Positions 3,619-32,298 of a stretch of 64,000 nt of DNA are shown here, piece by piece; the stretch's first letter is position 1, and every line of letters begins with the position of its first letter. The notes below the pieces were generated by a model, which saw only the letters and a list, made by a program, of their open reading frames with translations, was not told where the DNA came from and did no database searches. Location: positions 124,001 to 188,000 of the IMG/VR virus record IMGVR_UViG_3300017987_000001. One strand, given 5' to 3'. Made by a program: the position numbers and the translations under genes.

Positions 3619-3627
3619 TTCGCGCTC

Positions 3628-5490
3628 CTAATACTTCGCCCCGGCCATCCCGTCGGGCTTAATCGGAGGCTTCCCGAACTCGGTCGTCTGCGCCAGCGAC
3701 GGAATGAACGATTCGCTGTGCTGCGCAGCTCCGAGGCCACGGTGCACCGATTGTAGCAGATTCTTTTTCAGATGGAAACCACCAAGTCGTACCATCCAAT
3801 CCTCGTTGTACCCCAGCGTCTCCATGGCGCGCACCATCTCCGGGGCGAACATCGGCTCGTCGGAGTGAGCCTTCACGGTCTTGAGTCCGCGCTTGTTGAT
3901 CTCAGCGGCAATGCGCGGCGTGATCTTCGTACCGATGGAGTACTGGAAGATCGGCTCCTCCAAGTACATGCCCACGGCACTCTTCGGTCGCATGGGCTTC
4001 GTACCCGTGCGCGGCTGATACTCGCGTGTGAGCGTGCTGAACTCTACCACATCATCGGGCAGCATGTCGGTGGTTCCGTCGGAGTCGACAATCCGTGCAT
4101 GGTTGATCAATCCGCGCGTCAGCAGCTCGATGTTCCGACGGTTCGCATCGATCTTGGTGGCCTTCAACGTGTTCCGGAAGTTGTTCATGAAGTGCCAGCG
4201 TCCGGCACCGATGCCCTTGTACTTCACAACCTCGGACGGGTTCGGCAAGCCTTCGCTCAATACGTCACCGGCCTCGATCTTGTCGCCGGGCACGACGGTC
4301 GGGTCGAACTCGGGCGCGACGTAGTGCTTCACGCCGCGCACGATAATGAAGTGACCGCCCTGCGGCGCTTTCTCGATGCCCTCGACAGTACCGTCGGTCT
4401 GCGCGATAGCCGCGCCGCCCATGAACGTACGTGGCACCTGAACGAGCTGGTTGATCGCATCGAAGCCGCCAGCGGTAGGACCAGCACCAACGACACCGCC
4501 GGTATGCTTCGAGGAGATAGCTGACTGCGTAATCGGCTCCGAGATAGCCTGTGCCGCTGCAACACCGACGTTGTCACCGATCTCGGGGAGCTTGCCCTTC
4601 TCGCGCACACCGACGCACCGGGCACACACACCATCGCGTGCCTGACACGTGAGCGGGCTGCGCACGATGATCTCTTTACCGTCACGCCCTATGCGCTTGG
4701 CTGCCTTCGTATCGATGATCGTATTCGCTTTGAAGCCCCCAGCGGGAGCTGCAAGGATCGAGCCAACGTTATCCGGGTCATCAGCGTCGACCGGGATGCC
4801 GTTGACCGTACCGCAATCATCCTCAGTGACGAGCAGCCGGTGAGATGCAAGCGCGAGCTGCTTGCCGAGAAAGCCGCCCTTCGGCGTGGCGAACTTGAGG
4901 TCGACCATGCCCTTTCGTGCCCCGTACGAGCCAGCCCAGTACTCGACTGGGTCCAGCCCCTCAGCGTACGAGTTGAGCAACGGGATCGGAACCGGGTTGC
5001 CTTTGTGGTCGGCCACGAGCAGGTCGCCGATGTTCGTCTGACTGAACTGAATCGGGTTGCCGCGTGCGCCGGAGTTGACCTGCATGGCGAGCGCGTTACG
5101 AAGGTCGAGCTGCTCTTGGAAGTTCAGTTTCCTAAGATCGTCGGCGCGCTTGCCGAGAAGTTTTATGACTCGCTCATTCTTTTGCTCATCGGTGAGCGGG
5201 GAGTTCAGAATCCTATTAACGCCACTACGTAGCTCGTCGCGAATCTTCTGTGCCTTCGGCCCTACAGTTAGAGAATCTAGGCTGATGGACGCCTCGCGGC
5301 CGTAGGTGGTAACCACCTCGGCCCCGAGGTCCATCATCTTCTTCGCGATCTCGTTGTACTGCTCCGGGTAGCGCTTCGCCACTTCGCGCAGGACCGTCTT
5401 GATCGTCTTCTTATTGATGGGACGATCGTAGTCCCGCATATCCGGCGGCAGGATGTCGTTGATCAGCAGTTGACCGACTGTAGTCTTCAC
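3628..5490 (-). CDS. rpoC: Multisubunit RNA polymerase beta' subunit, C-terminal half
   Basis: TTVGQ start, NSGARGN, bridge helix YGARKGMVD, EDDCGT, Zn site RSPLTC...CARC, trigger loop AAQAISEPITQ...KHTGG. Confidence 0.95.
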   Translation of the reverse strand: MKTTVGQLLINDILPPDMRDYDRPINKKTIKTVLREVAKRYPEQYNEIAKKMMDLGAEVVTTYGREASISLDSLTVGPKAQKIRDELRSGVNRILNSPLTDEQKNERVIKLLGKRADDLRKLNFQEQLDLRNALAMQVNSGARGNPIQFSQTNIGDLLVADHKGNPVPIPLLNSYAEGLDPVEYWAGSYGARKGMVDLKFATPKGGFLGKQLALASHRLLVTEDDCGTVNGIPVDADDPDNVGSILAAPAGGFKANTIIDTKAAKRIGRDGKEIIVRSPLTCQARDGVCARCVGVREKGKLPEIGDNVGVAAAQAISEPITQSAISSKHTGGVVGAGPTAGGFDAINQLVQVPRTFMGGAAIAQTDGTVEGIEKAPQGGHFIIVRGVKHYVAPEFDPTVVPGDKIEAGDVLSEGLPNPSEVVKYKGIGAGRWHFMNNFRNTLKATKIDANRRNIELLTRGLINHARIVDSDGTTDMLPDDVVEFSTLTREYQPRTGTKPMRPKSAVGMYLEEPIFQYSIGTKITPRIAAEINKRGLKTVKAHSDEPMFAPEMVRAMETLGYNEDWMVRLGGFHLKKNLLQSVHRGLGAAQHSESFIPSLAQTTEFGKPPIKPDGMAGAKY

Positions 5491-5494
5491 CGGC

Positions 5495-6642: not shown

Positions 6643-6658
6643 CGCGACTCCTCTGCCG

Positions 6659-9353: not shown

Positions 9354-9366
9354 GTCATGCGTCCTT

Positions 9367-9618
9367 TCATCCACCAACGCTTTGCCGTGCGTTGCGCCGT
9401 GCATCTACAACGCGCGCCCTCGATTTGCTCATCGCAGAAAGAAGCATTTCGATGAACCGTTGTTCTTCGCGCGTGTACTCGTTCGGAGCCTCGTCCGAAC
9501 CATTTGCCGCGAGATCACTTCGGGCGGTCAACGAGCTGAAGGGCACCGTCGGGTACGTCTTCAGCTGCGCCATCTTGCGCAATTGTTGAACGCGTCCAAA
9601 AATCTCGCGAAGCTTCAT
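9367..9618 (-). CDS. Small hypothetical protein (83 aa)
   Basis: Start at MKLREIF; TGATG overlap with the upstream stop. Confidence 0.6.
   Translation of the reverse strand: MKLREIFGRVQQLRKMAQLKTYPTVPFSSLTARSDLAANGSDEAPNEYTREEQRFIEMLLSAMSKSRARVVDARRNARQSVGG
9582..9603. promoter_or_regulatory. 22 bp palindrome copy 1 (ATTGTTGAACGCGTCCAAAAAT)
   Basis: Matches the consensus ATTGTTGGACGCGTCCAACAAT, seen 7 times in the window. Confidence 0.7.
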
Positions 9619-10310
9619 CAGTATCCGCCACCCTGTGCCGCGAACGGGTTCGGCGGAAGCCCGTAGCCAGCTTCCTGCGTCGCTGCCGCGAGCTGCGCAT
9701 CGTGCCCGCCCGGACCCATCTGCGGACCGGCCCACTGCTGCGGGCCGTAGTCGTACTGTTCGCCGCCCATACCAAGCCACTCAGGCGGCAGGAACATCGA
9801 CGCGAAGCCGAGCGTCTCAGCGCCGCCAAGCGCCGAGCGGCCAATACGCGCGGCCTGCCCGAGATTGCCGACGTTGGCCGGGTTCACGAGCTTGCCACCA
9901 GCGCGCGCCATAGCGCCCGGGTTCTTGAAGGTCTTGAGCAAGCGACTACCGGCACCGCTGAACCCGAGACGATTCAGGAGTCCGCCAAGCCCGCGCCCAC
10001 CGTACTGAACCGTCTTACCGATGTTGGTAGCGAGGCGGGTGGGTGTTCGACTCAGGAACTTGAGACCCAAGCCGCGCCCGAGCTTACCAATACCGCTGAG
10101 AAGCGGGCGTCCGAAGGCGAGAATCATCTGAAGCATCTGCGGATTGATGGCCTTCTTCTCCATCTTCGCCTGCTTCACAAGCCCAGCAAGCGCGACGGCC
10201 TGCGCCTTGACGAGCTTCTTGCGCACCTTCCGCTGACGTTGCTTCTTGTAGTCGCACGCGCGCTTCAGCACGAAGAGTGCCTCTTCTTTGGTCAGGATTG
10301 GCATCGGCAT
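9618..10310 (-). CDS. Putative virion protein, basic and Gly-rich (230 aa)
   Basis: ORF track; VKQAKMEKKAIN motif followed by amphipathic/Gly-rich segments. Confidence 0.7.
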   Translation of the reverse strand: MPMPILTKEEALFVLKRACDYKKQRQRKVRKKLVKAQAVALAGLVKQAKMEKKAINPQMLQMILAFGRPLLSGIGKLGRGLGLKFLSRTPTRLATNIGKTVQYGGRGLGGLLNRLGFSGAGSRLLKTFKNPGAMARAGGKLVNPANVGNLGQAARIGRSALGGAETLGFASMFLPPEWLGMGGEQYDYGPQQWAGPQMGPGGHDAQLAAATQEAGYGLPPNPFAAQGGGY

Positions 10311-10383
10311 CCTCCGATGCGCTGAATAGTTCTGCTCCGCATGAGCAATCTACTTGTTCAGCGCGAATGGCGCAAGAGTGATC

Positions 10384-11283
10384 TTACTTCTTGACCTTCC
10401 TGCGAGCGTACTTCTTCTTGCTGTGCTTTGGTCCGCACTTCGCGGACTTGTCACTCGACCCCTTGAACAGTTCGCTGCCGCCACCGATACCTGCGCCAGT
10501 GAGTCCGCCAAGCGCGAGCGAGCCAAGCGAAGGAGTCATGGAAATCTGATCGCCGATCCCCGGCATCTTGGCCTTGATAAGCAGCTTCGCGAGTAGTTCA
10601 GTCAGCGCTGCAGCCCCTGCTCCGCCAATCGCGCCACCGCCTGCGCCGCGACCAACGCGTCCCCAGTTCACGCCCTCATCCTTCTTTTCCTTCTTGTCGT
10701 CCTCGTCGGCAGCACGCTTACGGAACGCGAGCTTCTGCGCCATGCTGTCGAGCAGGTCGTGGCGGCCAAGCTCCTTGATCGCCGCCGCGACCTTCTTCAG
10801 TCGCTTGCGTCGACCGAGACCCATGAACGCCTGCTTGGTAGCCTCGTCCCGGAACTCGATCTTCAGTGGCATGGATAGGTTGAGCGCGCCCTGCGCGTCG
10901 ACCTTCGCATCCTCGATCGCTTCGACTAGCTCGTCGCAGAACGCGTTCGTGGCTTCCTTGGTGAGCGAGCCAGCCGTCAGCTTCGACAGCGCCTCGGATA
11001 GGCCGTAATCCTCGACGACAACCTCCTGCGCCTTCTGTGCGGCCGACTTGATCGTGACTGGGTGCTTGAACATGACCCTATTCCCTTCCAACGTTCCTCC
11101 CATGGCGGCGCAGGCAACTGCCGTTTCGAGATGCTCTGCAACCTTCGATAGCTCTATTTCGAGCGGCGGTACTTCTTCCTTCTTCCGTCCGACAAGGCTC
11201 TTCGTGAACTTGTCGGCAAGTACCCCCGCGATCTTGATATGATCGCCGGTAGCCTCAGAGATCACAAGATGGATATCACTCAT
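10384..11283 (-). CDS. Putative virion protein with C-terminal glycine zippers
   Basis: Start at MSDIHL (RBS GGAG); many KxA motifs; GAGGGAIGGAGAAAL and LALGGLTGAGIGGG segments. Confidence 0.7.
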   Translation of the reverse strand: MSDIHLVISEATGDHIKIAGVLADKFTKSLVGRKKEEVPPLEIELSKVAEHLETAVACAAMGGTLEGNRVMFKHPVTIKSAAQKAQEVVVEDYGLSEALSKLTAGSLTKEATNAFCDELVEAIEDAKVDAQGALNLSMPLKIEFRDEATKQAFMGLGRRKRLKKVAAAIKELGRHDLLDSMAQKLAFRKRAADEDDKKEKKDEGVNWGRVGRGAGGGAIGGAGAAALTELLAKLLIKAKMPGIGDQISMTPSLGSLALGGLTGAGIGGGSELFKGSSDKSAKCGPKHSKKKYARRKVKK

Positions 11284-11425
11284 CGGACTCACTCCTGTTC
11301 TTCCACGCCGCATCAAACTGCCGACGCCATATCCAGTGCCGCACGGTACTCGCGAGCGCCGGTGTTATCGCTACAACCAACAGAACAACTAGAAGAAAGA
11401 TGTTCAGGTTATCGGTATCGCTCAT
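11276..11425 (-). CDS. Small single-TM membrane protein (49 aa)
   Basis: Start at MSDTDN just after the RNAP stop; hydrophobic IFLLVVLLVVAITPALA. Confidence 0.55.
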   Translation of the reverse strand: MSDTDNLNIFLLVVLLVVAITPALASTVRHWIWRRQFDAAWKNRSESDE

Positions 11426-11426
11426 A

Positions 11427-14400
11427 TCACTTCCCGAACTGCACGGAGTCGCCCACGCGCAGTTCACCCCTCTTGTAAGCGCGCAGGACGTCGGCCTTCG
11501 ACATGAAGGTCTTCACACGCTTGTCCTTGGCCGTCGATGCGAGGTACAGCCCGTGCAGGAACTCCTGCCTTGGGAAGTAGTGCACGTCGAAGTCGGATGC
11601 CGCGAGGAGGTTCCGACTCGGCATCATCTTGTCGACCGCTTCTTCCACCGCCGCCTTGCTCACCGGCACATGGAAATTCATAGCGTCACCGTCGAAGTCG
11701 GCGTTGAATCCCGGCGTCACGATGGGCGGAATCTGCAGCGTGTTGCCCTTGGTGATGATTGGCCACGCCGCCATCATGCCGTAACGGTGAAGCACCGGCG
11801 CGCGGTTGATGATGACCGGCCGACGACCAGTCTCTTCGAGCAGCGCCTTGTACGCCACCTGATCCTGATTCTCGATCGCCTTGGCCGCAGCCATCGCGCC
11901 CATGCCGCGCCGAACGAGGTTGCGCATCACGAACGGACGGTAAAGCACCCACGCCTTGCTCTCGGGGAGGCCGACCTGATCCATGCCAAGACTGGGGTTC
12001 GGCGTGATCACGCCTCGACCAACGGTGTCGACAGCCGCCCCGAGCACCTTCTGCTGATACATGCCCAGCTTCGGGCTCGATCCGAAGATGTGGCGCAGCA
12101 AACCGCCGACCTGCTTCTCCTGCGTCTTCGCAGCGACCGGATCACCGAGACCCGTGACCGCCTTGTATGCCTTGTAGAGCCGCAGGCGCTCGTCACCAAG
12201 CTCGTCGTCGCCGAGATCGTTGCGCAGCTCGCGCAGGTCGTCGTTGACGCTCATGAGATCCGCGTAGAGGTAGTTCGGATCATCCACGAACGTCGTCTTG
12301 TTGAAGGTGGTGATCGGGCGGAAGTTCGGAGGAAGCACCGGAACCTTCGTCAGCATGAGGTCGGACGGCTTCTGTCCCGCCTGCTTCAGCGTGCGCAGGT
12401 AGCCAAGTACCTTCACGGCGTTATCGCGCTTCGCGCCGGTCGCCTCGCGCACCTGCGAGGAGTAGTGCTCGATCGCGTCGTCGACTTTGATACGCTTGAG
12501 CGCGCTCAGGATCGCCTTCGACCCGCGCTCACCGTTCAAGTCGTCGCGTCCGGCAATGATCCGCTCCAGCTTGTTCTGCGTCAGCCCGAGCATGCGGCGA
12601 ATCGGCTCTTCCATCACAGGATTCGGGATAGGCTCAGCGAGGTCGATGTGAGACCAGCGCGTGCCACCATGGCCGCCGGTGAGGCCGACATCGAAGAGGC
12701 CGCCCTTCACCGGCTCCATGGCGTCTCCCGTGACCGTGTCGTTCTTCTTGATCGGTCCGGCGGACATCTTATCGATGTCCTTATCCGTCATGGCAAACAG
12801 ATGCAGCTGCTCGCCCTTCTTCTTGAGGTTGATCCCCGACGCCTGAAGCATGCTCAGGAACTTGTCGTAGATCATCGGAACCTTCGGGCTTGCAGGCGTG
12901 TACCCGAGTCGGAGCGCACGCCAGAAGTCGTCATTGCGCTGCCCGCGCACGAGCTTGGCGTCGCGGATGACATCGGTCGCACCGTGGCTGATGAGCGCCA
13001 TCATCTCGCCGACGCCGATACGCTTCGAGCCTTCTTGGCCGCCACCTGCGGGCATGCCCTCAGCCGTGTACGAGCCGATGTCGCGGCCGGAGAGCTTCGG
13101 CTCGGCCATGTGGTGAAGCTTCATCATGTACGTGTAGCCCGTGAAGACCTTCGGGATCTTCCGACCGCTCACCGGATCATGGATATCCTCGGTGTCGCTC
13201 ATCCCGTGCTTCTGCAGTTCCTTCTTCGCGAGCGTGACATAGCTCTCGTCCATGAAGCCCGGCAGCTTGTAGGGCACGCCGGTCTTCTTCGCGATCTTGC
13301 CCAACGCGGTCTCGATGAGCTGCGCCGGGTTGATACGGCTCACGATGCCGAGCGACGACAGCGTGATGTCGAACGGCTTGCCGTCCTTGTCGTGCGGCAT
13401 CTGATCGTCGGGGATGATCTTCGAGATGACGCCCTTGCCGCCGTAGCGATTGGAGAGCTTGTCGCCGACGTGCATTGGCGAGTACGCCTTCACGATGACC
13501 TTCCAGCCCTCCTTCGTCTTGTCGACATCCGTGACCACGCCTTCCGACTCGTGATCCCACGTCTCGGACGCGTCGCTGTAGAGCGTCTTGCGTGCGCGCA
13601 GCATTCCGCCGCCAGACGGCTTACGCTTGGAGATCGACAGCACCAGCGGATCACCGAACTTCACCTTCGTGCCGATCTTCACGACGCCATTGTCATCGAT
13701 CGTCGACATCTGCTGCTTGTCAAAGGTGCCCGGATAGATCGACATATACGACTTCTTGCCTGCCTCCTGATTGTCAGACTGCTGGTACTTCGTCGTGTAC
13801 ATGTGCTCGCTGGCGAGACGCTTCGCAGCTGACTCACTGAGTACGAGCGCGTCATCGGCGTTGTACCCACGATATGGCAGGTATGCGACCTTCAGGTTCA
13901 TTCCGGAGGCCACTGCCCCTGTGTCGTCGGTGAAGTTGCTTCGAGCGAGCAGCTGACCGGGAGCGACAGGATCTCCAACTCGTACGACAGGAGTGTTGTG
14001 GAGGTAGGTCTTCCGGTTGAAGGGGAAGTTGTTATAGAGATCGTAAGAGACCTTCTCTCCGTCGGCATAGCGCACGACGACCTTATCCTTAGTGATCTCA
14101 GCAACCGACCCCATACCCTCTGCACGAACCGCACCAGCCCGATCACCATAGATCTCCTCGAAGCTGCGTCCCGAACCATCATCGGCGAGGTTCTGAACGA
14201 GCGGAGCCTCGGCATTGCGAAGCGGCAGCGCCTGCGTCGCCATCTTCGCGCCCATGAGCAGACGGCCACCCTTGATCGCACTGACCATGGGGACCATGTT
14301 CGCCGTCGCCGTGAACATGTGGCTCGTGTGCGGCAGCTCGAAGTCGACATCCTTACGCTTCACGTACGCGAGCTTCTTGCCACGGATCATCGCTCGCACT

Positions 14401-16925
14401 TCTTTGCCCTTGCGCGCAAGCTCGCCGGGGAATGCGATGATGCTCTTGGCCATCTTGCTGGCGCTGATGCGGCGCGGCTTGCCGGTCTTCGCGTCGAGCA
14501 TGTCAACGTAGATGTTCCCGTCCGAACCCTTGTACGTCCGGTGCGTGATGCGGCTGTCAACACCAATCTTCATGCCTTCGGGCGCACGAATGGGGTCGAT
14601 CACGCCGAAGTGCGACGGCTGCACGGCACGCGCTTCGTCGGGAACAGCGTCGAGACCGGGCATTCCGCCCTCACCCATGCGGGTGACGCGCACGAGCTGG
14701 TCGAAGATCTCAAGCGGGTTCACCTCTTCGAGCGGAGCTGCGAGACCGCTCTTGAGCAGCACAAGTCGAAGCTGCGGCGAGAGCGCGCCCGCCGGGAACT
14801 TCGAGACGTTGCCCTTGTTGGTAGCACGCCACAGCAGCTTACGGGACATGCCGCCAGCGTCACGGGCGATACGCTCGGCGAAGAGATCCTCGGGGCCGAA
14901 CACGCGCTGAAATGCGAGCGAGTCGCGATCGTCCGTATCCGCCTTGCGCTGGTTGATGTCGATGAGCTTCTTCGTGACTTCGGCGATCACTTCGGGCGAC
15001 AGCTTGTCGATCTTGCGGCCAAGCGTCATCTCGGTCGTGTCGGGGTCAACTTCCATCTTCTCGAAGACACCACGCATCTGAAGACCCATGTCATCATCCG
15101 CGCGCTTCTCCATCGCTGCGTCACGCCCCACGAACTGCACGAACGCGCGCTTGATCTCGTCGACCGGCAGCATGGCCTTCAGCTCTTCGAGCGTGGTGAA
15201 GCGGCGCGGAAGCGTCTTCTCCTTCTTCACGGCTTTGAGCTGCTTCTCGACCTTCGCCTGATCGGCCGCCGGGTTGCCCTTGATGTCCTGATTGGCCTGC
15301 TGCTGACGCTCGATCAGCTGCATCGGCTCTTCGTTCTCCATCATCTCTTCGGCGGGCATCGACATGTCGACAACATCGGCGAGCTTCGTCGCCATCGCGC
15401 TCTTGACGAGCGTGTCGGAGATCGCTTCCTCAATCGCGTTCGTCACGGCAAGGAACGCGTTGGCCGTCTTCTCCTCGACGCCGTCGAACAGCGCTGCGAT
15501 CTTCGAAGCGCCACGCGGCTGCTTCTTGGGCTTCACGGCGACGGTGATGTGGAACTGGAACTCCTTGCCGCTGTCATCGCCGCGCGGAAGCTCCTCGAAT
15601 CCGAGCGACTTGCGATGAGCACGCAGCTCGGGCGACTTCGCTTCGAGGAACCATACGCGATCCATCTCATCCCAGCCCTCGGGGTCGAGATCGACGATGG
15701 CGTTCTGCAAACTGAAGGGGAACTTGCGGCCATTACCGCATGCGGTCTTCCACTTCTTGCCGTACTTCCCGATCAGCTGCTTCGCTTCCCAGTTGCGCAG
15801 AACGCTGATGTGCGGGAGATCGAAGCGCGACTCGCAGTCGACGTCCTGATCCTTCAGCGCCTGATACGCAGCCTCGGGCAGTCCCTTGTGGATCTTGAGG
15901 TACGCCCACGGCTTGTCCGAATCCGAATCGTCGCATACCAGCTCGCCGACGAACTTCGCGCGGCGGCGGTTACCTTCCTCGTCCTCCTGCGCAGCCTTGG
16001 CGAACTTGAACTCGCTGCCCACCCAGAGCATGCACCAGCCGGTCGGCGCGACGAAGCCCTGCACCCGGCGGCACGCGTTGACGCCGTTGAAGTTCTTGCA
16101 GCTGGAGCACTGCTGGAAGAATCCCGACATCGTGTAGTTCACGTCGCCCTTGGAGGTCTTGCCGTAGCCGACGTGCTCCTCGGAGTAGCCAAAGAACGCT
16201 GCCTTCTCGGTAGCGTCGGTGTCCTGCTGCTCGGGAGGGGTCTCCTCGGGCTTCTTCGAAACAAGCTTGTGATACGCGCGCTGAACGGCACGCGGGTCGG
16301 ACGCAGCAACGTTCGCCTGCAGCAGGTCCGGTCCCCACGTCTCGTTGAGCTTGCGGTCGTCGTAACCCATCGAGCGAAGGATCGGATAGAGCTTGAGGTT
16401 CGCCTGCCCGACGTTCATGCGGAAGACGCCGGTCTCCGGCTCCATGTAGACCCTGAAGCTGCGCCCCGTGCCACCCTTGACGTTAAAGTGGGCCTCGATG
16501 ATGCCGTTGTCCTTAACTCGACTGTAGATGCCGGGGCGCAGCCTCATTTGGGACGCTACGGTATACTCGTTGCCGTTGAAGACGAACGTACCACGATCGG
16601 TGAGATACGGAACCTGAGCGATGAGCCGTTGGTTAGTCTTGTCGACAATCTTGCCGGATGCGTTATCGACAAGTTCCCACCGACCAGCGAGCTTCCATCC
16701 GAGCGTCTGGCCGCGCATGATCGCCCGCTTCTGCTCGGAGTTGGTGTACTGCTTCGGCTTCACGTACTTCACGTCGTTCAGCCGCAGCGTGTAGCGCTGG
16801 TTCGTCATCGGGAAGCGCTCTTCGATCGCCTTCTGCACGTTCGTGAACAGAAGCTGGCGCGTCGAGCGCACGTCGTCGAACTCACGCATCGTAGGTTCGT
16901 TGGGAGCAGCGATTACGTCGGCCAT
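11427..16925 (-). CDS. rpoBC: Multisubunit RNA polymerase: beta fused to N-terminal half of beta', with a ~370 aa internal insertion
   Basis: beta motifs GTFVFNG, HFGVIDPIRAPEG, RLLMGAKM, GYNADD, GDKLSNRYGGKG, YMMKLHH. beta' motifs VPVLPPNFRP, NRAPVLH and catalytic NADFDGD. Confidence 0.97.
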   Translation of the reverse strand: MADVIAAPNEPTMREFDDVRSTRQLLFTNVQKAIEERFPMTNQRYTLRLNDVKYVKPKQYTNSEQKRAIMRGQTLGWKLAGRWELVDNASGKIVDKTNQRLIAQVPYLTDRGTFVFNGNEYTVASQMRLRPGIYSRVKDNGIIEAHFNVKGGTGRSFRVYMEPETGVFRMNVGQANLKLYPILRSMGYDDRKLNETWGPDLLQANVAASDPRAVQRAYHKLVSKKPEETPPEQQDTDATEKAAFFGYSEEHVGYGKTSKGDVNYTMSGFFQQCSSCKNFNGVNACRRVQGFVAPTGWCMLWVGSEFKFAKAAQEDEEGNRRRAKFVGELVCDDSDSDKPWAYLKIHKGLPEAAYQALKDQDVDCESRFDLPHISVLRNWEAKQLIGKYGKKWKTACGNGRKFPFSLQNAIVDLDPEGWDEMDRVWFLEAKSPELRAHRKSLGFEELPRGDDSGKEFQFHITVAVKPKKQPRGASKIAALFDGVEEKTANAFLAVTNAIEEAISDTLVKSAMATKLADVVDMSMPAEEMMENEEPMQLIERQQQANQDIKGNPAADQAKVEKQLKAVKKEKTLPRRFTTLEELKAMLPVDEIKRAFVQFVGRDAAMEKRADDDMGLQMRGVFEKMEVDPDTTEMTLGRKIDKLSPEVIAEVTKKLIDINQRKADTDDRDSLAFQRVFGPEDLFAERIARDAGGMSRKLLWRATNKGNVSKFPAGALSPQLRLVLLKSGLAAPLEEVNPLEIFDQLVRVTRMGEGGMPGLDAVPDEARAVQPSHFGVIDPIRAPEGMKIGVDSRITHRTYKGSDGNIYVDMLDAKTGKPRRISASKMAKSIIAFPGELARKGKEVRAMIRGKKLAYVKRKDVDFELPHTSHMFTATANMVPMVSAIKGGRLLMGAKMATQALPLRNAEAPLVQNLADDGSGRSFEEIYGDRAGAVRAEGMGSVAEITKDKVVVRYADGEKVSYDLYNNFPFNRKTYLHNTPVVRVGDPVAPGQLLARSNFTDDTGAVASGMNLKVAYLPYRGYNADDALVLSESAAKRLASEHMYTTKYQQSDNQEAGKKSYMSIYPGTFDKQQMSTIDDNGVVKIGTKVKFGDPLVLSISKRKPSGGGMLRARKTLYSDASETWDHESEGVVTDVDKTKEGWKVIVKAYSPMHVGDKLSNRYGGKGVISKIIPDDQMPHDKDGKPFDITLSSLGIVSRINPAQLIETALGKIAKKTGVPYKLPGFMDESYVTLAKKELQKHGMSDTEDIHDPVSGRKIPKVFTGYTYMMKLHHMAEPKLSGRDIGSYTAEGMPAGGGQEGSKRIGVGEMMALISHGATDVIRDAKLVRGQRNDDFWRALRLGYTPASPKVPMIYDKFLSMLQASGINLKKKGEQLHLFAMTDKDIDKMSAGPIKKNDTVTGDAMEPVKGGLFDVGLTGGHGGTRWSHIDLAEPIPNPVMEEPIRRMLGLTQNKLERIIAGRDDLNGERGSKAILSALKRIKVDDAIEHYSSQVREATGAKRDNAVKVLGYLRTLKQAGQKPSDLMLTKVPVLPPNFRPITTFNKTTFVDDPNYLYADLMSVNDDLRELRNDLGDDELGDERLRLYKAYKAVTGLGDPVAAKTQEKQVGGLLRHIFGSSPKLGMYQQKVLGAAVDTVGRGVITPNPSLGMDQVGLPESKAWVLYRPFVMRNLVRRGMGAMAAAKAIENQDQVAYKALLEETGRRPVIINRAPVLHRYGMMAAWPIITKGNTLQIPPIVTPGFNADFDGDAMNFHVPVSKAAVEEAVDKMMPSRNLLAASDFDVHYFPRQEFLHGLYLASTAKDKRVKTFMSKADVLRAYKRGELRVGDSVQFGK
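15520..15960 (-). other. 2H phosphoesterase-like domain inserted in RNAP beta
   Basis: Two H-x-[ST]-hydrophobic motifs: PHISVL (H372) and FHITVAV (H459), 87 aa apart. Confidence 0.75.
16023..16146 (-). other. HiPIP-like 4-Cys (putative Fe-S) domain inserted in RNAP beta
   Basis: CSSC-x8-C-x11-WC-x2-W (..PTGWCMLW) matches the HiPIP cysteine spacing. Confidence 0.65.
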
Positions 16926-18017: not shown

Positions 18018-18374
18018 TCAGAACCCTCTCTGCGGGTTGTACACATACAGATCGGCCCACCGCAGGAAGACACGCCAGTTCTTCGTCTCCGGATCGTACT
18101 CCCGGTCCTCAGCAGAGATGACTGCATGCCCGTTGGAGTACATCGTGTAGATGTCCGCCATGCGCTTGCGATCCTTCTCGTCACTCATATCGAGAATCTC
18201 GACGTGAGCACGCACGCCCTGCTTGGGCTGCATATGATCGGGATCGTCGTTCTTCAGGTCGGGCACATGGCCACGGAACGGGAGACCGTCCATGCCCGGA
18301 AGAATCGCGGGCATGTCGCGCTGCCCATTGGATGGATCGATCAGCTTGCCGTCGATATCCCAGCGATCAGCCAT
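18018..18374 (-). CDS. Hypothetical protein (118 aa)
   Basis: ORF track; tightly packed in the operon. Confidence 0.7.
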   Translation of the reverse strand: MADRWDIDGKLIDPSNGQRDMPAILPGMDGLPFRGHVPDLKNDDPDHMQPKQGVRAHVEILDMSDEKDRKRMADIYTMYSNGHAVISAEDREYDPETKNWRVFLRWADLYVYNPQRGF

Positions 18375-19831
18375 CAGATCTCCACCCCTCCTGCGGTCAT
18401 CGGAAGAATCTTGTTGTGCGCGTCGTCGGGCTGCGTCTCACCCTCTGCCTCGCGCTCCTGCGGCTGATTCTTCTTCGCACGGCGTTCAGCCTGCCGCGTG
18501 AGCCGCTTGTAGAGCGCCATGCGCTCAACGTGCCGCAGCTCTTCCGGATCAAGCGTAGGCTCCCGAGAGAGCGAGTATGCGGCGGTCGAAGCACCGGCAC
18601 CTAGGAGCGGAATGCCTGCAGTGGGGATGAGAAACGTGAGTATGGCGAGGTTCTTCGCCAATCCCCCTCCCTGCCGGATGATCTCCGCGAGTGCACTCGT
18701 TTGCGCCGCCTTCTCCAGCGCGCCATCGAGTTCGCTCGGCCGGATACCCGCCTCGGCGAACTTCTCGTAGAAGCCGTACTTGAACGCATTCTTCTTCAGC
18801 TTCTCGACGTCACGATCCTTGCGCTCCTTGTTCTCCGTGTGCTTCTTCGTTCCTTCGCCGACCGCCTCGATCTTCCCCTCGTCGACAGCGTCTTCCATAC
18901 CCTTTTCGAGATCGTCGAGTCGCGGCTCGTAGTAATCGTCTCCCTCTGTGAGGTGATCTTTCGCAATCTCCTGTGCCACTGCCGGATTGCTCGTGTGCTC
19001 AAGCTCTACTTCGGTGCCCTTCTCGATCTGAGCCTTCGGGAACATCGACGTGGGCATACCGGCGGCGAGTCCGCCGGGAATCACGTCGTCCTTGCCACCA
19101 ACGAGCTTGGCGAGGAGGCGATAGATCTCCTCCTCCGCCTCATGCTCGTCGACGCCGAGTGACTCTGCTTGCTGGTGGAAGCCCTCGTCGTCGATACCCT
19201 GTCCCATCTGCGTGATGTAGTTCACGAGCTGCTGTAGGATCTCGGGCGGCAGCGACTCTTCAGCCTCGTGCTCGGGCGATTCGATCTCGCCTTCCTCGTG
19301 CTCTTCGCTTTCATCCCCGTTGGCACTCTTCACGACGTACTCGACGAAGCTCTGCATCTTCGGCATGCCGCTGATGCCCTGCAGCGCCTGTGCGAGCGAC
19401 GGAGCTGGCTGCGACGGCCCATTGAGGCCAAGCAGATTGCTGGGCGCTTCGGGCGTGCCGGGAGCGGCCGGTCCCATAGCCGACGGGTTGCCGCCCTCTT
19501 CGACGACCTTCTCCTCAGGCGTGCGGTGAAGCCCGGGGTAGCGCAGCTCTTCGATCATGCGCCGCCGACGATCGGCCTTCTCGGCCTCGTTCTTCTGAGC
19601 AATAGCCTGCAGAAGCGGAGCTTTCTCCATAACCGTGCGGAAGTCCTGCCCCTTCAGCGCTTCGAGCGCGTCGATGCCGATGCCCTTCTGATCGAGCTTC
19701 CTCATGCGCTCGGTCATCGTAGGCGTGGGCATGCCGCTCATCGGCTGGACGCCGGGTAGCCCCGGCATACCTGCGCCGATGTTCGCCTGCTTGAGGTGAT
19801 TTTTGAACGCGTCCAACAATCTCTGGGGCAT
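18374..19831 (-). CDS. Acidic putative virion protein with DUF5661-like segment and C-terminal TM
   Basis: KGTEVELEHTSNPAVAQEIAKDHLTEGDDYY resembles DUF5661; KQAN, KSAN, KNAF, KAAQ motifs. Confidence 0.7.
   Translation of the reverse strand: MPQRLLDAFKNHLKQANIGAGMPGLPGVQPMSGMPTPTMTERMRKLDQKGIGIDALEALKGQDFRTVMEKAPLLQAIAQKNEAEKADRRRRMIEELRYPGLHRTPEEKVVEEGGNPSAMGPAAPGTPEAPSNLLGLNGPSQPAPSLAQALQGISGMPKMQSFVEYVVKSANGDESEEHEEGEIESPEHEAEESLPPEILQQLVNYITQMGQGIDDEGFHQQAESLGVDEHEAEEEIYRLLAKLVGGKDDVIPGGLAAGMPTSMFPKAQIEKGTEVELEHTSNPAVAQEIAKDHLTEGDDYYEPRLDDLEKGMEDAVDEGKIEAVGEGTKKHTENKERKDRDVEKLKKNAFKYGFYEKFAEAGIRPSELDGALEKAAQTSALAEIIRQGGGLAKNLAILTFLIPTAGIPLLGAGASTAAYSLSREPTLDPEELRHVERMALYKRLTRQAERRAKKNQPQEREAEGETQPDDAHNKILPMTAGGVEI
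19799..19820. promoter_or_regulatory. 22 bp palindrome copy 2 (ATTTTTGAACGCGTCCAACAAT)
   Basis: Consensus match; intragenic. Confidence 0.7.
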
Positions 19832-19842
19832 GGGGCTGCTCC

Positions 19843-21816
19843 CTATCGCATGAATGGGCTACCGGGGGACTGCGCTGCGGGCGCTCCCCGGAAGTAGCCC
19901 ATGATACTCGAAATCGTGTCGAGAATGTTGCCCGTATCTCGGATTGACTGCGGCTTCGTGCCGAGCAGCATACTCAGCAGATTCTCTCTGAGACCGAACG
20001 GCTTCGCGGGCGCCGGGCCGCCCATCCAATGCGGCTTCGCCGGAGAGCCGCCGCCCATCCACGCAGGCTTCTGTGGTCCGCCACCGCCGAGCAGCCCACC
20101 AAGGAACGCCTGCTTCAGCAGCCCAGCCGATTCGTGGACCTTGTCCCAATCGACCGAAGCTGCATGCTCGAAAATGGATTGTAGTATCGTGATCTTCCCG
20201 GTCTTGGGGTTCATGTAGATGTCCCCAGCCTCTGGGTTCTCTGGGTCAAGCGGTCCCAATCGAATCGAATCTTCTTCATCGTCATCAAAGCGATGCGCTC
20301 CTGCATCGACTGCGCGTTGATCTTCTTTCCACTGCTCTTCATCCTCGTCGGGTTCCTTCTTAGAGAATGGCCAGAGCGCTTCCTTCAACAGGATGCCTGC
20401 GTAGTCGGATGCTTTCCTCATGTCTGGATAGTCCTCGTGAATGGAGATCAGTCCGGGCGCGCGGTACGCCCCACTCGGGAACTGACCCTGTGCCTTGATC
20501 CGAGCAATCCGACCAAGGAACTCCTCCGGGTTCTTCAGCATTGCCCGCCGAAGATCCTCGGAGAATCCCGTTCCTACTTTACCAACTGCGGGGCCGTCAG
20601 GCGAGAGCGAATACTCGAAGCCGCCCGCTCCGACGCCCTCCAACCGCTTCTCGCCGGGGAAGATGTCCTTCACGAACACGTCGTGCTCGTCGTACAGCTT
20701 GACCTTCGCGGGCTTGCCGCCCTTCTTCGGCCACGCTACAATGCCCTCATGAGTAAGCGGATCACGCCCACCCTTGACATCCTCCCACAGAGCACGCTGT
20801 TCTTCCGGGGTCTCGGCCATTCGTGGGAGATGGAACTTGCCTTCAGGCAGATGCTTGAGGATTTCGCGGACCTTATCAAGGCGCTCGGCAATCGGGACGT
20901 CCATGCCGATGGGCTTCTTGCCGTACTTCAGGATATTGAAGATTGCATTGCGGAGCTGAACGCCCTGCTCGCGCTGCTTCTTCAGCGATTTGCGCGTCGA
21001 GGAGTTAAGAATCCCACCCAGTTCTTGGGGAGGGATGGCACGATCATCACGCGTACCGTAGAGTTCCCCACGGAGAATTGATCCCACGAGATGCTTGGGG
21101 ATGTTGAGGCCAGTAGTTCCTCCAACTCGGTAGGTGTGGACAATAGGTCGGCCAGTCGTTGTCGGCCGGTATGAGAGAACATCGATCTTATCCGAGAATA
21201 GCTTGTAGAGGGCTGCTGCTCCATCGATCTTCTCCATGTGGAGGTACTTCTCGTCGAAGAGCTTCTCCACGTCCTCGGCCGGAACCTTGGCGTACCGAAC
21301 CTTCTTGTGCTTGATGACCTCCGTGGGCGTCGTGTTGATCATCAGCCACGAGCCGCCCTGCGTCTTCTTCGTACGCGGCGAGCCGCCGGTGGGCGGTCCG
21401 CTCTTGCGTATCATCGTGTACATCTCTGGGTGCTTCTTGTGCGTGACCACGAAGTTGATCTTGTTCGGCTCGACCTTCGTGACCAGCACCGTGCCTTTGT
21501 CGTGCGTCTTCACCAGCCCCTTGCCGTAGCCCGACGTTATTTCGCCCTCGAAATTCGCGTAGGCTCCGGTGTGAAGCGGTTGTTGGAATGCTAAAACTTT
21601 CTGCCCCGACTCCTCGGGGAGTTTGCGTGATGCCCAACTGAGAAGTGATGGCTTGCCGCCTAGGTTTGGTCCGAACCGAATATCGTAGTGCGGCCCAGCT
21701 CGGTCAGCTAGGTGGCGCTGGATCACATACAGAAGCTCACGGCCCTTCGGGAGATCCGTAACGCTCCCGAAGCGCCGTGGGTCTGGTAGGCCCGGCGCGA
21801 ACTCAGTCTTGGCCAC
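19843..21816 (-). CDS. LigD-type 3'-phosphoesterase domain fused to ATP-dependent DNA ligase, plus KxA-bounded tail
   Basis: PE motifs IQRH...HYDIRF, H..YANFEG...GYGKG. Ligase motifs EKIDG, GELY, EGIV, KVK and OB-fold GKVGTGF. Confidence 0.88.
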   Translation of the reverse strand: MAKTEFAPGLPDPRRFGSVTDLPKGRELLYVIQRHLADRAGPHYDIRFGPNLGGKPSLLSWASRKLPEESGQKVLAFQQPLHTGAYANFEGEITSGYGKGLVKTHDKGTVLVTKVEPNKINFVVTHKKHPEMYTMIRKSGPPTGGSPRTKKTQGGSWLMINTTPTEVIKHKKVRYAKVPAEDVEKLFDEKYLHMEKIDGAAALYKLFSDKIDVLSYRPTTTGRPIVHTYRVGGTTGLNIPKHLVGSILRGELYGTRDDRAIPPQELGGILNSSTRKSLKKQREQGVQLRNAIFNILKYGKKPIGMDVPIAERLDKVREILKHLPEGKFHLPRMAETPEEQRALWEDVKGGRDPLTHEGIVAWPKKGGKPAKVKLYDEHDVFVKDIFPGEKRLEGVGAGGFEYSLSPDGPAVGKVGTGFSEDLRRAMLKNPEEFLGRIARIKAQGQFPSGAYRAPGLISIHEDYPDMRKASDYAGILLKEALWPFSKKEPDEDEEQWKEDQRAVDAGAHRFDDDEEDSIRLGPLDPENPEAGDIYMNPKTGKITILQSIFEHAASVDWDKVHESAGLLKQAFLGGLLGGGGPQKPAWMGGGSPAKPHWMGGPAPAKPFGLRENLLSMLLGTKPQSIRDTGNILDTISSIMGYFRGAPAAQSPGSPFMR

Positions 21817-21842: not shown

Positions 21843-22412
21843 TTATAGACGAGTGCCGCGAATCAGGCAATATACATCGCGGTTCTTGTCGACGTGGTCG
21901 ATGTCGCTCCAGATGGGGTTGCCTATCCCGAGATCGGACAGGAATGACTCCTCTCGGGCCACGGACTCCTTGTTCATCGTGACGATCGTACCTCCGACAG
22001 CCGTCACGCGCGCCAGCTCTCGTGAGACGGTCTCCCGGTCCTTCGCCGCATTGATGCTCTGCATCGTCATGATGTCGACCACGAGATCGAACGTGCCGTC
22101 GTCGAAGGGCAGCTGGAATGTGTTCAGCGTGACGGGCGTCACGGTCTTGCGGTTGTTGGCCGCTCTGCCCACCCAATCGCCGAAGAGATCCGCTGCCCAC
22201 ACGTGCCCGCACTTCGATGCGATCTGCTGCGTGAACCGCCCGTAGCCACAACCGAAGTCGAGACCGTGCGTGTAGAAGCCCGTGAGCACCTTCGTCAGCT
22301 CGGCCCCAATGATGGTGCCCTGCCGCACGTGATCCTCACCCACGTGGCCCACGCACTTGTCGCCGAAGCGCTTCTTGCGATCGGTCCAGTATTTCAGCGT
22401 GTCGGAGAACAT
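21843..22412 (-). CDS. Class I SAM-dependent methyltransferase
   Basis: GLDFGCGYG motif I; FDLVV motif. Confidence 0.85.
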   Translation of the reverse strand: MFSDTLKYWTDRKKRFGDKCVGHVGEDHVRQGTIIGAELTKVLTGFYTHGLDFGCGYGRFTQQIASKCGHVWAADLFGDWVGRAANNRKTVTPVTLNTFQLPFDDGTFDLVVDIMTMQSINAAKDRETVSRELARVTAVGGTIVTMNKESVAREESFLSDLGIGNPIWSDIDHVDKNRDVYCLIRGTRL

Positions 22413-22413
22413 G

Positions 22414-26419: not shown

Positions 26420-26422
26420 GAC

Positions 26423-32297: not shown

Positions 32298-32298
32298 G

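What the first reader, a model, noticed from the sequence alone, without database searches (positions are those of the whole stretch)
15520..15960. 2H phosphoesterase (Acb1-like) embedded in the RNAP: possible pre-packaged anti-defence nuclease
Seen: PHISVL and FHITVAV motifs 87 aa apart, with LEAKSPELRAHRKSLG between them. Established: paired HxS/T motifs define 2H phosphoesterases, and the phage T4 protein Acb1 is a 2H enzyme that cleaves CBASS cyclic nucleotides. Inference: if the RNAP is ejected from the virion, this domain could destroy cyclic-oligonucleotide signals from the start of infection. An RNA 2',3'-cyclic phosphate repair role is an alternative.
Basis: partly seen in the sequence, partly recalled or inferred. 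Interest (0 to 1): 0.85.

Follow-up and report, generated by a model that had tools for sequence, protein, structure and literature searches.

The report
Phosphoesterase domain inside phage RNA polymerase
A large uncultured phage has a well-conserved, apparently active two-histidine (2H) phosphoesterase domain built into a surface lobe of its own RNA polymerase; the domain is real and unusual, but it is not a member of the Acb1 anti-CBASS family and its substrate is still unknown.

Summary
Window 11427-16925 (minus strand) is one uninterrupted 1832-aa ORF encoding a fused RNA polymerase beta + beta'-N-terminal subunit. Its only two canonical H-phi-[S/T]-phi motifs (H372, H459) lie in a 157-aa domain (aa 322-478). 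That domain matches Pfam 2H-SAK, gives a confident AlphaFold model (pLDDT 86.5), and finds mainly 2H enzymes by Foldseek.

It sits in a ~380-aa insertion at one fixed point of the beta lobe region, together with a HiPIP-like four-cysteine module and a variable linker. The cultured relatives Arash and D69 lack the insertion, as do about half of 104 related polymerases. So the domain is an accessory, not part of the catalytic core. Where present, it is the best-conserved segment of the protein (74% versus 63-68%).

It is not Acb1: no PF23474 match, and hhalign probability is 1.5% or less. Its relatives are N-terminal 2H domains of multidomain phage proteins that also carry InPase, SET, NUDIX or GNAT domains.

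Packaging in the virion is supported only by analogy, from mass spectrometry of Arash virions. Signal-nucleotide degradation (about 0.4) and RNA 2',3'-cyclic-phosphate end healing (about 0.3) cannot be separated by computation.

Verdict: a real feature and a new variant of a known kind.

The parts
11427..16925 (-). Gene for the fused RNA polymerase beta + beta' N-terminal half (1832 aa), the carrier of the domain
   Evidence: Uninterrupted ORF. Pfam finds Rpb2_3, Rpb2_6, Rpb1_1 and Rpb1_2, and NADFDGD is at aa 1741. It is 31-33% identical to Arash gp206 and Vibrio phage D69 0261.
15081..16226 (-). Lineage-specific insertion (aa ~234-615) at a fixed point in the beta lobe region
   Evidence: Arash gp206 aligns to aa 30-233 and 611-1831 with nothing in between. 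In 2H-less relatives the flanks are 2-9 aa apart. The flanks align to Salmonella RpoB on either side of the lobe region.
15999..16172 (-). HiPIP-like four-cysteine module (aa 252-309; C273, C276, C285, C298, then GWC..W)
   Evidence: The cysteines are invariant in 16 homologues. The profile hits the HiPIP PioC (6xyv) at E = 1e-4 with all four cysteines aligned. Pfam HIPIP matches 13 of 16 members. The fold is not confirmed: pLDDT is below 55 in this part.
15492..15962 (-). 2H phosphoesterase domain of the 2H-SAK family (aa 322-478), the finding itself
   Evidence: Pfam 2H-SAK matches 17 of 17 members, best E = 3.7e-9; the window copy scores 25.2 bits against a cut-off of 27. AlphaFold2 pLDDT is 86.5. 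Most top Foldseek hits are 2H enzymes. It is the most conserved segment of the protein.
15798..15815 (-). First catalytic motif, PHISVL (H372, S374)
   Evidence: It lies at the start of a predicted beta strand.
15600..15647 (-). Conserved SPEL..R helix (aa 427-442), with family-invariant R438 and near-invariant S431 and P432
   Evidence: and predicted helix 111-119 of the model. A role in binding phosphate or substrate is inferred only.
15534..15554 (-). Second catalytic motif, FHITVAV (H459, T461)
   Evidence: It lies on a predicted beta strand.
15081..15491 (-). Poorly conserved acidic linker returning to the beta core (aa 479-615)
   Evidence: Mean identity is 35%, against 63-74% for the other segments. 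This linker was not detected in relatives outside the HiPIP-bearing clade.
3628..5490 (-). Separate gene for the beta' C-terminal half (620 aa), the partner subunit
   Evidence: Pfam Rpb1_4 and Rpb1_5 and PHROG RNA polymerase families. It is homologous to Arash gp216 and D69 0264.
18374..19831 (-). Neighbouring gene with a weak DUF5661 match; possibly linked by function
   Evidence: Pfam DUF5661 at 25.6 bits, just below the cut-off. DUF5661 is fused to 2H-SAK in other proteins and in related polymerases.
19843..21816 (-). Neighbouring gene: LigD-type 3'-phosphoesterase fused to an ATP-dependent ligase (657 aa); possibly linked by function
   Evidence: Pfam LigD_N and PHROG 114 ligase, plus PDB matches to archaeal phosphoesterase domains. 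LigD_N and a ligase OB domain were each found in one 2H-SAK protein of 93; one search does not show whether it is the same protein.

Best explanation
Window 15492-15962 (minus strand) encodes a catalytically competent 2H phosphoesterase of the 2H-SAK family. It was inserted, with a HiPIP-like four-cysteine module and a variable linker, at one fixed surface point of the beta lobe region of a phage-encoded fused beta/beta'-N RNA polymerase subunit.

Shown:
- The domain, its motifs, its fold class and its insertion point.
- It is an accessory: about half of sister polymerases lack it.
- It is under strong purifying selection.

Inferred mechanism:
- H372 and H459 act as the general acid/base pair, with S374 and T461 holding the phosphate. 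This is the metal-independent chemistry of all 2H enzymes.
- The bond attacked is a ribose-phosphate linkage: opening of a 2',3'-cyclic phosphate, or cleavage of a 3'-5' or 2'-5' bond through a cyclic intermediate.

Most likely role (about 0.4): a counter-defence hydrolase carried by the polymerase. It would destroy host nucleotide second messengers (cyclic oligonucleotides, or 2'-5'-linked or cyclic-phosphate-bearing signals). If this polymerase is packaged like that of phage Arash, the activity would be present from the moment of DNA entry and located where the first transcripts are made.

It works like Acb1 only in the sense of shared superfamily chemistry. It is not a member of the Acb1 family.
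For: Domain identity:
- Pfam 2H-SAK and 2_5_RNA_ligase2 matches.
- A profile search of 1.84 billion representatives gave 521 hits. Of 93 next-tier hits scanned, 92 are PF22547 proteins.
- AlphaFold2 pLDDT is 86.5, with both HxS/T motifs on strands.
- Most of the top Foldseek PDB hits are 2H enzymes: drCPDase, Usb1, penguinpox cGAMP PDE, Acb1 and the BCSR5 PDE. BFVD hits reach E = 2.5e-5 and TM 0.60-0.64 and include an entry named 'Swiss Army Knife 2H phosphoesterase'.

Active site retained:
- Both histidines are invariant in 148 sequences.
- 163 of 165 homologues keep two motifs.

Selection:
- The 2H segment averages 74% identity, against 67-68% for the beta core and 63% for beta'-N.

Accessory nature:
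- The insertion site is discrete. Fifty of 104 related polymerases carry the 2H domain. One 2H-less polymerase is nested in a 2H clade with support 0.97.

Conflict-effector flavour:
- Partner domains in non-polymerase relatives are InPase (7), SET (5), SNF2 (3), DUF5661 (3), NUDIX (2), peptidase C39 (2) and GNAT (2). No RNA-ligase family was listed.
- Related polymerases carry SET, DUF5661, InPase, LNS2 or GNAT as further accessory domains.
- Iyer et al. 2017 reasoned that polyvalent-protein 2H domains degrade signalling nucleotides or act as RNases.

Delivery:
- Arash gp206 and gp216 were among the most-detected proteins in purified virions.
Against: - No biochemical data exist for any 2H-SAK member that I could find.
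- No solved structure is detectable by sequence.
- Foldseek matches to solved 2H enzymes are weak (E about 1e-2, TM 0.36-0.45) and do not discriminate substrates.
- It is not in the Acb1 family.
- Packaging is inferred from a relative with about 31-33% identity that lacks the insertion, and its authors allow for contamination.
- A LigD-type 3'-phosphoesterase/ligase gene lies three genes upstream. LigD_N and a ligase OB domain also each occur in one 2H-SAK protein of 93. Both points favour nucleic-acid end repair.
- Conservation higher than that of the polymerase core could instead mean a role integrated with transcription.
- Nothing explains why a freely diffusing signal would need a tethered hydrolase, other than delivery.
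Confidence: 0.4

Rival explanations
1. RNA end healing. The domain is a 2',3'-cyclic phosphodiesterase that opens the cyclic-phosphate ends left on tRNAs or phage transcripts by host metal-independent RNases (anticodon nucleases, toxins, Csm6- or Cas13-type effectors). A 3'-phosphoesterase and a ligase, possibly the LigD_N/ligase protein encoded three genes upstream, would then restore them. Sitting on the polymerase keeps the activity close to new transcripts.
For: - 2',3'-cyclic-phosphate opening is the canonical 2H reaction. The top PDB fold hit is the Deinococcus CPDase 5h7e.
- BFVD hits include entries named RNA 2',3'-cyclic phosphodiesterase and RNA ligase fusions.
- The Pfam family name comes from 'Swiss Army Knife' RNA-repair proteins. 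This is from my memory of Burroughs and Aravind 2016; the paper was not readable here.
- A LigD_N + ATP-ligase gene is at 19843-21816. LigD_N and a ligase OB domain each occur in one 2H-SAK protein of 93.
- Arash virions also contained two RNA ligases.
Against: - No RNA-ligase or RtcB family was listed among the partners of 93 relatives. One AAA_18 match might be kinase-like.
- No RNA ligase or kinase appears in the precomputed Pfam annotation of genes across about 64 kb around the polymerase.
- Iyer et al. 2017 noted that polyvalent-type 2H domains never associate with RNA ligases.
- The other accessory domains on related polymerases (SET, GNAT, InPase) are not repair enzymes.
- The beta lobe faces downstream DNA, not the RNA exit. 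This point is from general knowledge of bacterial RNAP structure and was not tested here.
Confidence: 0.3
2. Ribonuclease. Like Usb1, the domain cleaves RNA 3' ends or internal sites and leaves cyclic phosphates. It would either degrade host RNA at take-over or trim phage transcripts.
For: - Usb1 is the second-best PDB fold hit (6pgl, probability 0.96, the best TM at 0.45).
- Iyer et al. 2017 listed an RNase role as one of two predictions for polyvalent-protein 2H domains.
Against: - All fold matches are weak and do not separate Usb1 from the other 2H enzymes.
- No RNA-binding module was recognised in the insertion.
- An RNase fixed to the phage's own polymerase risks damaging phage transcripts.
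Confidence: 0.12
3. Non-catalytic module. The 2H fold, with the four-cysteine module, is used as a structural or regulatory surface of the lobe and has no hydrolytic role. It might bind DNA, a sigma-like factor, a packaging partner or a nucleotide ligand.
For: - It is the most conserved segment of the protein, which would suit an interaction surface.
- Bacterial beta lobes carry non-enzymatic lineage-specific insertions (general knowledge).
Against: - Both histidines and the second-motif threonine are invariant or nearly so across 148 sequences. These include non-polymerase proteins in which the domain sits in quite different contexts.
- About half of related polymerases function without the insertion.
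Confidence: 0.08

Closest known systems
2H-SAK domain (Pfam PF22547) of multidomain phage 'Swiss Army Knife' or polyvalent-type proteins
   Same: - Same sequence family. The profile of the polymerase domains retrieves these proteins at E = 1e-13 to 1e-19, and 92 of 93 scanned pass PF22547.
- They share the signature GW..(M)(S/D)RVWF.E..SPEL..(L)RKS.GL..LP....FHIT.
- The same partner domains recur: SET, DUF5661, InPase, LNS2 and GNAT.
   Different: - In those proteins the domain is usually the N-terminal module: it starts within the first 100 residues in 141 of 165 homologues. Here it is an internal insertion in an RNA polymerase beta subunit.
- The window copy scores 25.2 bits, just under the 27-bit Pfam cut-off.
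- No member has a tested activity that I could find.
Acb1, the anti-CBASS nuclease (T4 gene 57B; Pfam PF23474; PDB 7t26 and 7t27)
   Same: - Same 2H superfamily and similar small size: about 150 aa, two HxS/T motifs, metal-independent chemistry (PMC9117128).
- It appears among the fold hits: 7t27 at E = 0.087 and 7t26 at E = 0.12. BFVD Acb1 entries score E = 0.03-0.3.
   Different: - No PF23474 match for any of 17 domains, while T4 Acb1 scores 202.7 bits.
- hhalign probability is 0.24% and 1.5%.
- The histidines are 87 residues apart here, against 69 (H44 and H113) in T4 Acb1.
- Acb1 is a free-standing protein, not part of a polymerase. Its lid and adenine-binding residues were not identifiable here.
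LigT/ThpR-type RNA 2',3'-cyclic phosphodiesterases (for example Deinococcus CPDase, PDB 5h7e) and Pfam 2_5_RNA_ligase2 (PF13563)
   Same: - Best PDB fold hit by E-value.
- PF13563 matches 14 of 17 members weakly.
- Same two-lobed HxS/T architecture.
   Different: - TM is only 0.36, and sequence matches are below threshold.
- Those enzymes are free-standing and about 180 aa. No sequence-level relation to any solved chain was found.
Phage multisubunit RNA polymerases with accreted enzymatic domains or lineage-specific lobe insertions
   Same: - Precedent that phage RNAP subunits acquire hydrolase domains. In AR9-like Bacillus jumbo phages the beta C-terminal piece is fused to an HD phosphohydrolase (PMC7824862).
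- Precedent that the beta lobe tolerates insertions, as in E. coli beta SI1 (from memory).
- The fused beta/beta'-N plus separate beta'-C arrangement matches Arash gp206 and gp216.
   Different: - A different enzyme family (2H, not HD) and a different location (lobe insertion, not C-terminal fusion).
- The polymerase aligns along its length with bacterial RpoB and RpoC, and its cultured relative Arash encodes sigma factors. I did not compare it with the phiKZ/AR9 split type.
- Arash and D69 have no insertion.

Membership tests
2H phosphoesterase superfamily | Two H-x-S/T motifs with hydrophobic neighbours, tens of residues apart | tested here: met
   HISV at 372 and HITV at 459 are the only such motifs in the protein. 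Both histidines are invariant in 148 relatives.
2H phosphoesterase superfamily | Two-lobed alpha+beta fold with each motif on a central beta strand | tested here: met
   The model has pLDDT 86.5 with both motifs on strands 51-55 and 137-145. Most top PDB and BFVD fold hits are 2H enzymes, though PDB scores are weak (TM 0.36-0.45) and BFVD scores better (TM up to 0.64, E = 2.5e-5).
2H-SAK (Pfam PF22547) | Own score at or above the Pfam gathering cut-off (27 bits) | tested here: not met
   The window domain scores 25.2 bits (E = 2.1e-5), narrowly below the cut-off. Homologous polymerase domains reach E = 3.7e-9.
2H-SAK (Pfam PF22547) | Significant profile-level homology to bona fide members | tested here: met
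   All 17 polymerase domains match PF22547 at E <= 0.1. The profile of these domains finds 261 proteins at E <= 1e-10. Of 93 scanned, 92 pass PF22547 at E <= 1e-4.
Acb1 (Pfam PF23474) | Match to the Acb1 family profile | tested here: not met
   No hit at E <= 1 for the whole protein or at E <= 0.1 for any of the 17 domains. The positive control, T4 57B, scores 202.7 bits.
Acb1 (Pfam PF23474) | Profile-to-sequence homology with T4 Acb1 | tested here: not met
   hhalign probability is 0.24% with the 17-sequence profile and 1.5% with the 148-sequence profile.
Acb1 (Pfam PF23474) | [quoted passage not shown] | not testable with these tools
   Defined biochemically in PMC9117128. It needs an enzyme assay.
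Virion-packaged (injected) RNA polymerase | Presence of the subunit in purified virions and early host-independent transcription | not testable with these tools
   Only an analogy is available. Arash gp206 (3516 spectra) and gp216 (1210 spectra) were detected in virions, with the authors' caveat about carry-over. This phage is uncultured.
Polyvalent proteins (Iyer et al. 2017) | Several effector domains in one polypeptide joined to a packaging or transfer module (MuF, portal and the like), often with a processing protease | tested here: not met
   Pfam finds no MuF, portal or protease module in the protein; the carrier is the polymerase itself. The resemblance lies in the domain repertoire only.
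HiPIP (Pfam PF01355), for the adjacent four-cysteine module | C-x2-C ... C ... G-W-C pattern with the four cluster ligands, and a match to HiPIP profiles | tested here: inconclusive
   The four cysteines and GWC..W are invariant. PioC (6xyv) is hit at E = 1e-4 and 3h31 at E = 0.013, with the cysteines aligned. Pfam HIPIP matches 13 of 16 members, but all E-values are 3.9e-4 or weaker and the window copy scores only 9.8 bits against a cut-off of 22. The structure model is unreliable here. Fe-S binding is not testable.

The most novel reading that the evidence does not exclude
In a widespread clade of ~200-kb environmental phages, the phage's own RNA polymerase doubles as a delivery platform for counter-defence enzymes. 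The lobe insertion site and the N-terminus collect the same domains that other phages string together in injected polyvalent proteins: 2H, SET, DUF5661, InPase, LNS2, GNAT and a HiPIP-like module. The 2H domain would then be a polymerase-tethered 'ring nuclease'. It would destroy cyclic-oligonucleotide alarm signals (type III CRISPR cOA, CBASS) at the site and time of the first transcription, which is where type III systems are triggered. The neighbouring four-cysteine module might gate this activity by redox state or by Fe-S cluster occupancy.
Probability: 0.2. Interest if true: 0.85.

Novelty: new variant of a known kind. Interest (0 to 1): 0.62.

Why it matters
If the domain is active, this is a multisubunit RNA polymerase with a built-in 2H phosphoesterase. 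I found no description of such an architecture in the literature searches I ran.

It would show that phage polymerases, like polyvalent proteins, can serve as carriers for host-conflict enzymes. It would also give the large and biochemically untested 2H-SAK family a tractable representative. That representative comes with a clear genetic contrast: natural sister polymerases with and without the domain.

It would also make two open questions testable. One is what the polyvalent-type 2H domains actually cleave. The other is whether counter-defence enzymes are delivered with the transcription machinery.

If it turns out to be a plain cyclic-phosphodiesterase for RNA repair, the finding is still a new architecture, but of moderate interest.

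Tried and rejected
- **Similarity to known phages.** Megablast of the gene and tblastn of the insertion against 50,697 phage records found nothing. PHROGs has no family for the insertion.
- **Solved structures by sequence.** Searches of the PDB with the 17-sequence and the 148-sequence profiles found nothing significant. The best hit was E = 0.89, to a phage BCSR5 protein labelled Acb1.
- **Acb1 membership.** Tested and rejected.
- **Joint model of the four-cysteine module plus 2H.** It was poor: pLDDT 68, and below 55 for the cysteine part. It gives no information on how the two pack, so I ran no fold search on it.
- **Intein or other selfish insertion.** Rejected. The window polymerase has no intein or homing-endonuclease match, and the domain is more conserved than its host protein.
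- **Read-through of a stop.** Not needed for this ORF. A crude test gave no genome-wide sign of TAG recoding, despite a tRNA with a CUA anticodon.
- **Context look-ups for free-standing or oddly placed relatives** (P0022, P0026, P0024, P0019). They were uninformative: short contigs, or neighbours with no recognisable domains. The gene upstream of the split-type P0019 is not the missing beta N-terminal piece.
- **Literature.** Burroughs and Aravind 2016 could not be opened. No paper mentions 2H-SAK, PF22547 or the BCSR5 phosphodiesterase.
- **A second copy in the window.** None: a six-frame scan found neither a second 2H nor a second HiPIP-like copy.

Full report
**1. The observation**

The stretch lies on the minus strand inside one uninterrupted ORF, window 11427-16925, of 1832 aa. 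JGI called the same ORF on the source contig, a 207,878-bp metagenomic contig.

The protein is a fusion of RNA polymerase beta with the N-terminal half of beta'. Pfam finds Rpb2 domains 3 and 6 and Rpb1 domains 1 and 2, and NADFDGD is at aa 1741. The C-terminal half of beta' is a separate gene about 6 kb downstream, at 3628-5490. Salmonella phage Arash (gp206 and gp216) and Vibrio phage D69 have the same arrangement. No stop has to be read through for the domain in question.

PHISVL is at aa 371-376, FHITVAV at aa 458-464, and LEAKSPELRAHRKSLG at aa 427-442, with H372 and H459 87 residues apart. They are the only two canonical H-phi-[S/T]-phi motifs in the 1832 residues. A pair 60-110 residues apart arose in 0.2% of 20,000 shuffles.

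**2. What the domain is**

Sequence evidence:
- Alone, the window's domain matches Pfam 2H-SAK (PF22547) at 25.2 bits, E = 2.1e-5. That is just under the 27-bit cut-off. It also matches 2_5_RNA_ligase2 weakly.
- Seventeen homologous polymerases from metagenomes carry the same region at 53-80% identity. All 17 match PF22547, the best at E = 3.7e-9.
- A profile of these domains, searched against 1.84 billion representative proteins, found 521 hits, 261 of them at E <= 1e-10. Of 93 next-tier hits scanned, 92 are PF22547 proteins.
- In a 148-sequence alignment, H372, P415, W418, R438 and H459 are invariant. T461, S431 and P432 are nearly so. Of 165 homologues, 163 keep two HxS/T motifs.

Structure evidence:
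- An AlphaFold2 model of aa 322-478 has mean pLDDT 86.5, with both motifs on beta strands.
- Most of the top Foldseek hits in the PDB are 2H enzymes: Deinococcus CPDase, Usb1, the penguinpox cGAMP phosphodiesterase, Acb1, a Burkholderia phage phosphodiesterase, CNPase and AKAP18. These scores are weak, at E about 1e-2 and TM 0.36-0.45.
- Predicted viral structures match better, up to E = 2.5e-5 and TM 0.64. They include an entry named 'Swiss Army Knife 2H phosphoesterase domain-containing protein'.
- No solved structure is detectable by sequence.

I conclude that this is a genuine 2H phosphoesterase domain with its catalytic residues intact. It is a somewhat divergent member of the 2H-SAK family.

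**3. Not Acb1**

Pfam has an Acb1 family, PF23474. T4 gene 57B scores 202.7 bits on it. Neither the whole window protein nor any of the 17 domains matches it. hhalign of the domain profiles against T4 Acb1 gives 0.24% and 1.5% probability. Foldseek ranks several other 2H enzymes above the Acb1 entries. The likeness to Acb1 is therefore the shared superfamily chemistry described by Hobbs et al. (PMC9117128), not family membership.

**4. Anatomy of the insertion**

Arash gp206 aligns to aa 30-233 and then to aa 611-1831, with nothing in between. D69 behaves the same way. The inserted ~380 residues have three parts:
- A four-cysteine module, aa 252-309. C273, C276, C285 and C298 followed by GWC..W are invariant. 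Its profile hits the HiPIP PioC at E = 1e-4 with all four cysteines aligned. Pfam HIPIP matches 13 of 16 members weakly. Its fold could not be confirmed.
- The 2H domain, aa 322-478.
- A poorly conserved acidic linker, aa 479-615.

The flanks align to Salmonella RpoB at annotated residues 125-194 and from 458 onward. That record's RpoB is 38 residues longer than the usual 1342 (my inference), so these correspond to E. coli beta about 87-156 and from about 420. This brackets the lobe (beta2), the domain that carries the SI1 insertion in E. coli. The lobe boundaries are from memory. In relative P0022, a weak Pfam Rpb2_2 (lobe) match follows directly after the insertion.

**5. Distribution**

Searching with the polymerase core (aa 640-1290) found 2760 homologues at E <= 1e-20. 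Many sit on contigs of 190-211 kb. Among the top 120:
- The junction is all-or-none. In polymerases without a 2H domain the flanks are 2-9 residues apart, with two exceptions that carry other inserts of 92 and 121 residues. In all polymerases with a 2H domain they are at least 200 residues apart.
- The smallest insertions, about 200 residues, are the 2H domain alone. Larger ones add HiPIP, SET, DUF5661, LNS2 or InPase. Two polymerases carry an N-terminal GNAT domain.
- In some, the subunit is split at the site, so that the 2H domain becomes the N-terminus of the large piece.

On a FastTree of the core rooted with Arash and D69, 50 of 104 tips carry the domain, and parsimony needs at least 3 changes. 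One 2H-less polymerase (P0207) is nested in a 2H clade with support 0.97. Another (P0168) is sister to the window's clade with weaker support, 0.76. The polymerase-borne 2H domains group together in a domain tree, but weakly, with support 0.53.

So the domain is dispensable for RNA synthesis. Yet where it is present it is the best-conserved part of the protein: mean identity 74%, against 67-68% for the beta core, 63-64% for beta'-N and beta-N, and 35% for the linker.

**6. Function**

The chemistry can be stated with fair confidence. It is metal-independent acid/base catalysis by the two histidines on a ribose-phosphate bond. The substrate cannot be stated.

Points favouring a conflict-effector role on nucleotides:
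- The non-polymerase relatives are multidomain proteins with the 2H domain at the N-terminus. Their partner domains are InPase, SET, SNF2, DUF5661, NUDIX, peptidase C39, LNS2 and GNAT, and no RNA-ligase family was listed.
- The same repertoire decorates the polymerases.
- Iyer et al. 2017 argued that 2H domains of phage polyvalent proteins, which never accompany RNA ligases, are RNases or degraders of signalling nucleotides.
- In Arash the homologous polymerase subunits are among the most-detected virion proteins, so delivery with the DNA is plausible.

Points favouring RNA end healing:
- It is the canonical 2H reaction, and the best PDB fold hit by E-value is a CPDase.
- A LigD-type 3'-phosphoesterase fused to an ATP-dependent ligase lies three genes upstream.
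- LigD_N and a ligase OB domain each occur in one 2H-SAK protein of 93.
- Against it, precomputed Pfam annotation shows no RNA ligase or kinase across the ~64 kb surveyed.

My estimates are about 0.4 for signal-nucleotide hydrolysis, 0.3 for end healing, 0.12 for an RNase, and 0.08 for a non-catalytic role.

**7. Novelty and verdict**

The domain family is known and named. Phage polymerases with accreted hydrolase domains have a precedent in the HD domain of AR9-like phages. A 2H phosphoesterase inserted in the beta lobe, as the constant core of a variable cassette of conflict-type domains, did not appear in any paper I could search.

I class it as a new variant of a known kind. The central idea, an accessory counter-defence phosphoesterase riding on the polymerase, remains the leading hypothesis.

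Noticed in passing
window 15999-16172 (-), aa 252-309 of the polymerase: A HiPIP-like four-cysteine module lies directly upstream of the 2H domain (C-x2-C-x8-C-x12-C, then GWC..W). It is invariant in 16 homologues. Its profile hits the HiPIP PioC at E = 1e-4, and Pfam HIPIP matches 13 of 16 members weakly. A possible Fe-S module inside an RNA polymerase lobe would be unusual. It occurs only in the window's own clade of polymerases.
   Followed up: partly
related polymerases P0022, P0166, P0174, P0180, P0181, P0190, P0198, P0004, P0013 (no window coordinates): Sister polymerases carry other accessory domains: SET, DUF5661, InPase and LNS2, and an N-terminal GNAT in P0004 and P0013. SET and DUF5661 in P0022 lie at the same lobe site; the positions of the others were not mapped. 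This is the repertoire seen in non-polymerase 2H-SAK proteins. In some, the beta subunit is split exactly at the insertion site, with the 2H domain as the new N-terminus.
   Followed up: partly
window 15501-15515 (-), aa 471-475: An invariant R-G-x-S motif, followed by a conserved K in most members, sits just after the 2H domain in the window's clade. It is absent from the wider family consensus. It could be a processing or modification site, but there is no evidence either way.
   Followed up: no
window 33903-36677 (-): The portal protein homologue is 924 aa, against 579 aa in Arash. The extra ~320 residues interrupt the alignment and give a weak intein-splicing match (aa 152-425). Inteins and LAGLIDADG domains are also common in the related polymerases.
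   Followed up: partly
window ~21843-33866 (-): A ~12-kb run of sugar- or glycan-modifying genes lies between the portal and the polymerase. It includes a GT2 glycosyltransferase, a UDP-glucose dehydrogenase, two NAD-dependent epimerase/dehydratases, at least five methyltransferases and a possible sulfotransferase. The target (virion, DNA or host surface) is unknown.
   Followed up: no
window 19843-21816 (-) and 18374-19831 (-): A LigD-type 3'-phosphoesterase fused to an ATP-dependent ligase (657 aa), and a 485-aa protein with a weak DUF5661 match, sit just upstream of the polymerase. Both domain types occur fused to 2H-SAK elsewhere.
   Followed up: partly
window 49136-49210 (-); also 2350-5490 (-): ARAGORN finds a tRNA with anticodon CUA, an amber suppressor type that it labels Pyl. 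A crude test shows no general TAG recoding. However, the beta' C-terminal ORF ends in TAG, and the next ORF (2350-3618, 422 aa) continues in the same frame, so suppression would fuse them into 1069 aa.
   Followed up: partly
window 5491-11426 (-): About ten ORFs with no family match separate the two polymerase genes. Arash also has a run of small genes in this position, but no sequence similarity between the two sets was detected.
   Followed up: no
window 63126-64000 (-), running off the window end (L008 428-3325): A 965-aa family A DNA polymerase carries an N-terminal uracil-DNA glycosylase (UDG) domain in the same polypeptide.
   Followed up: no
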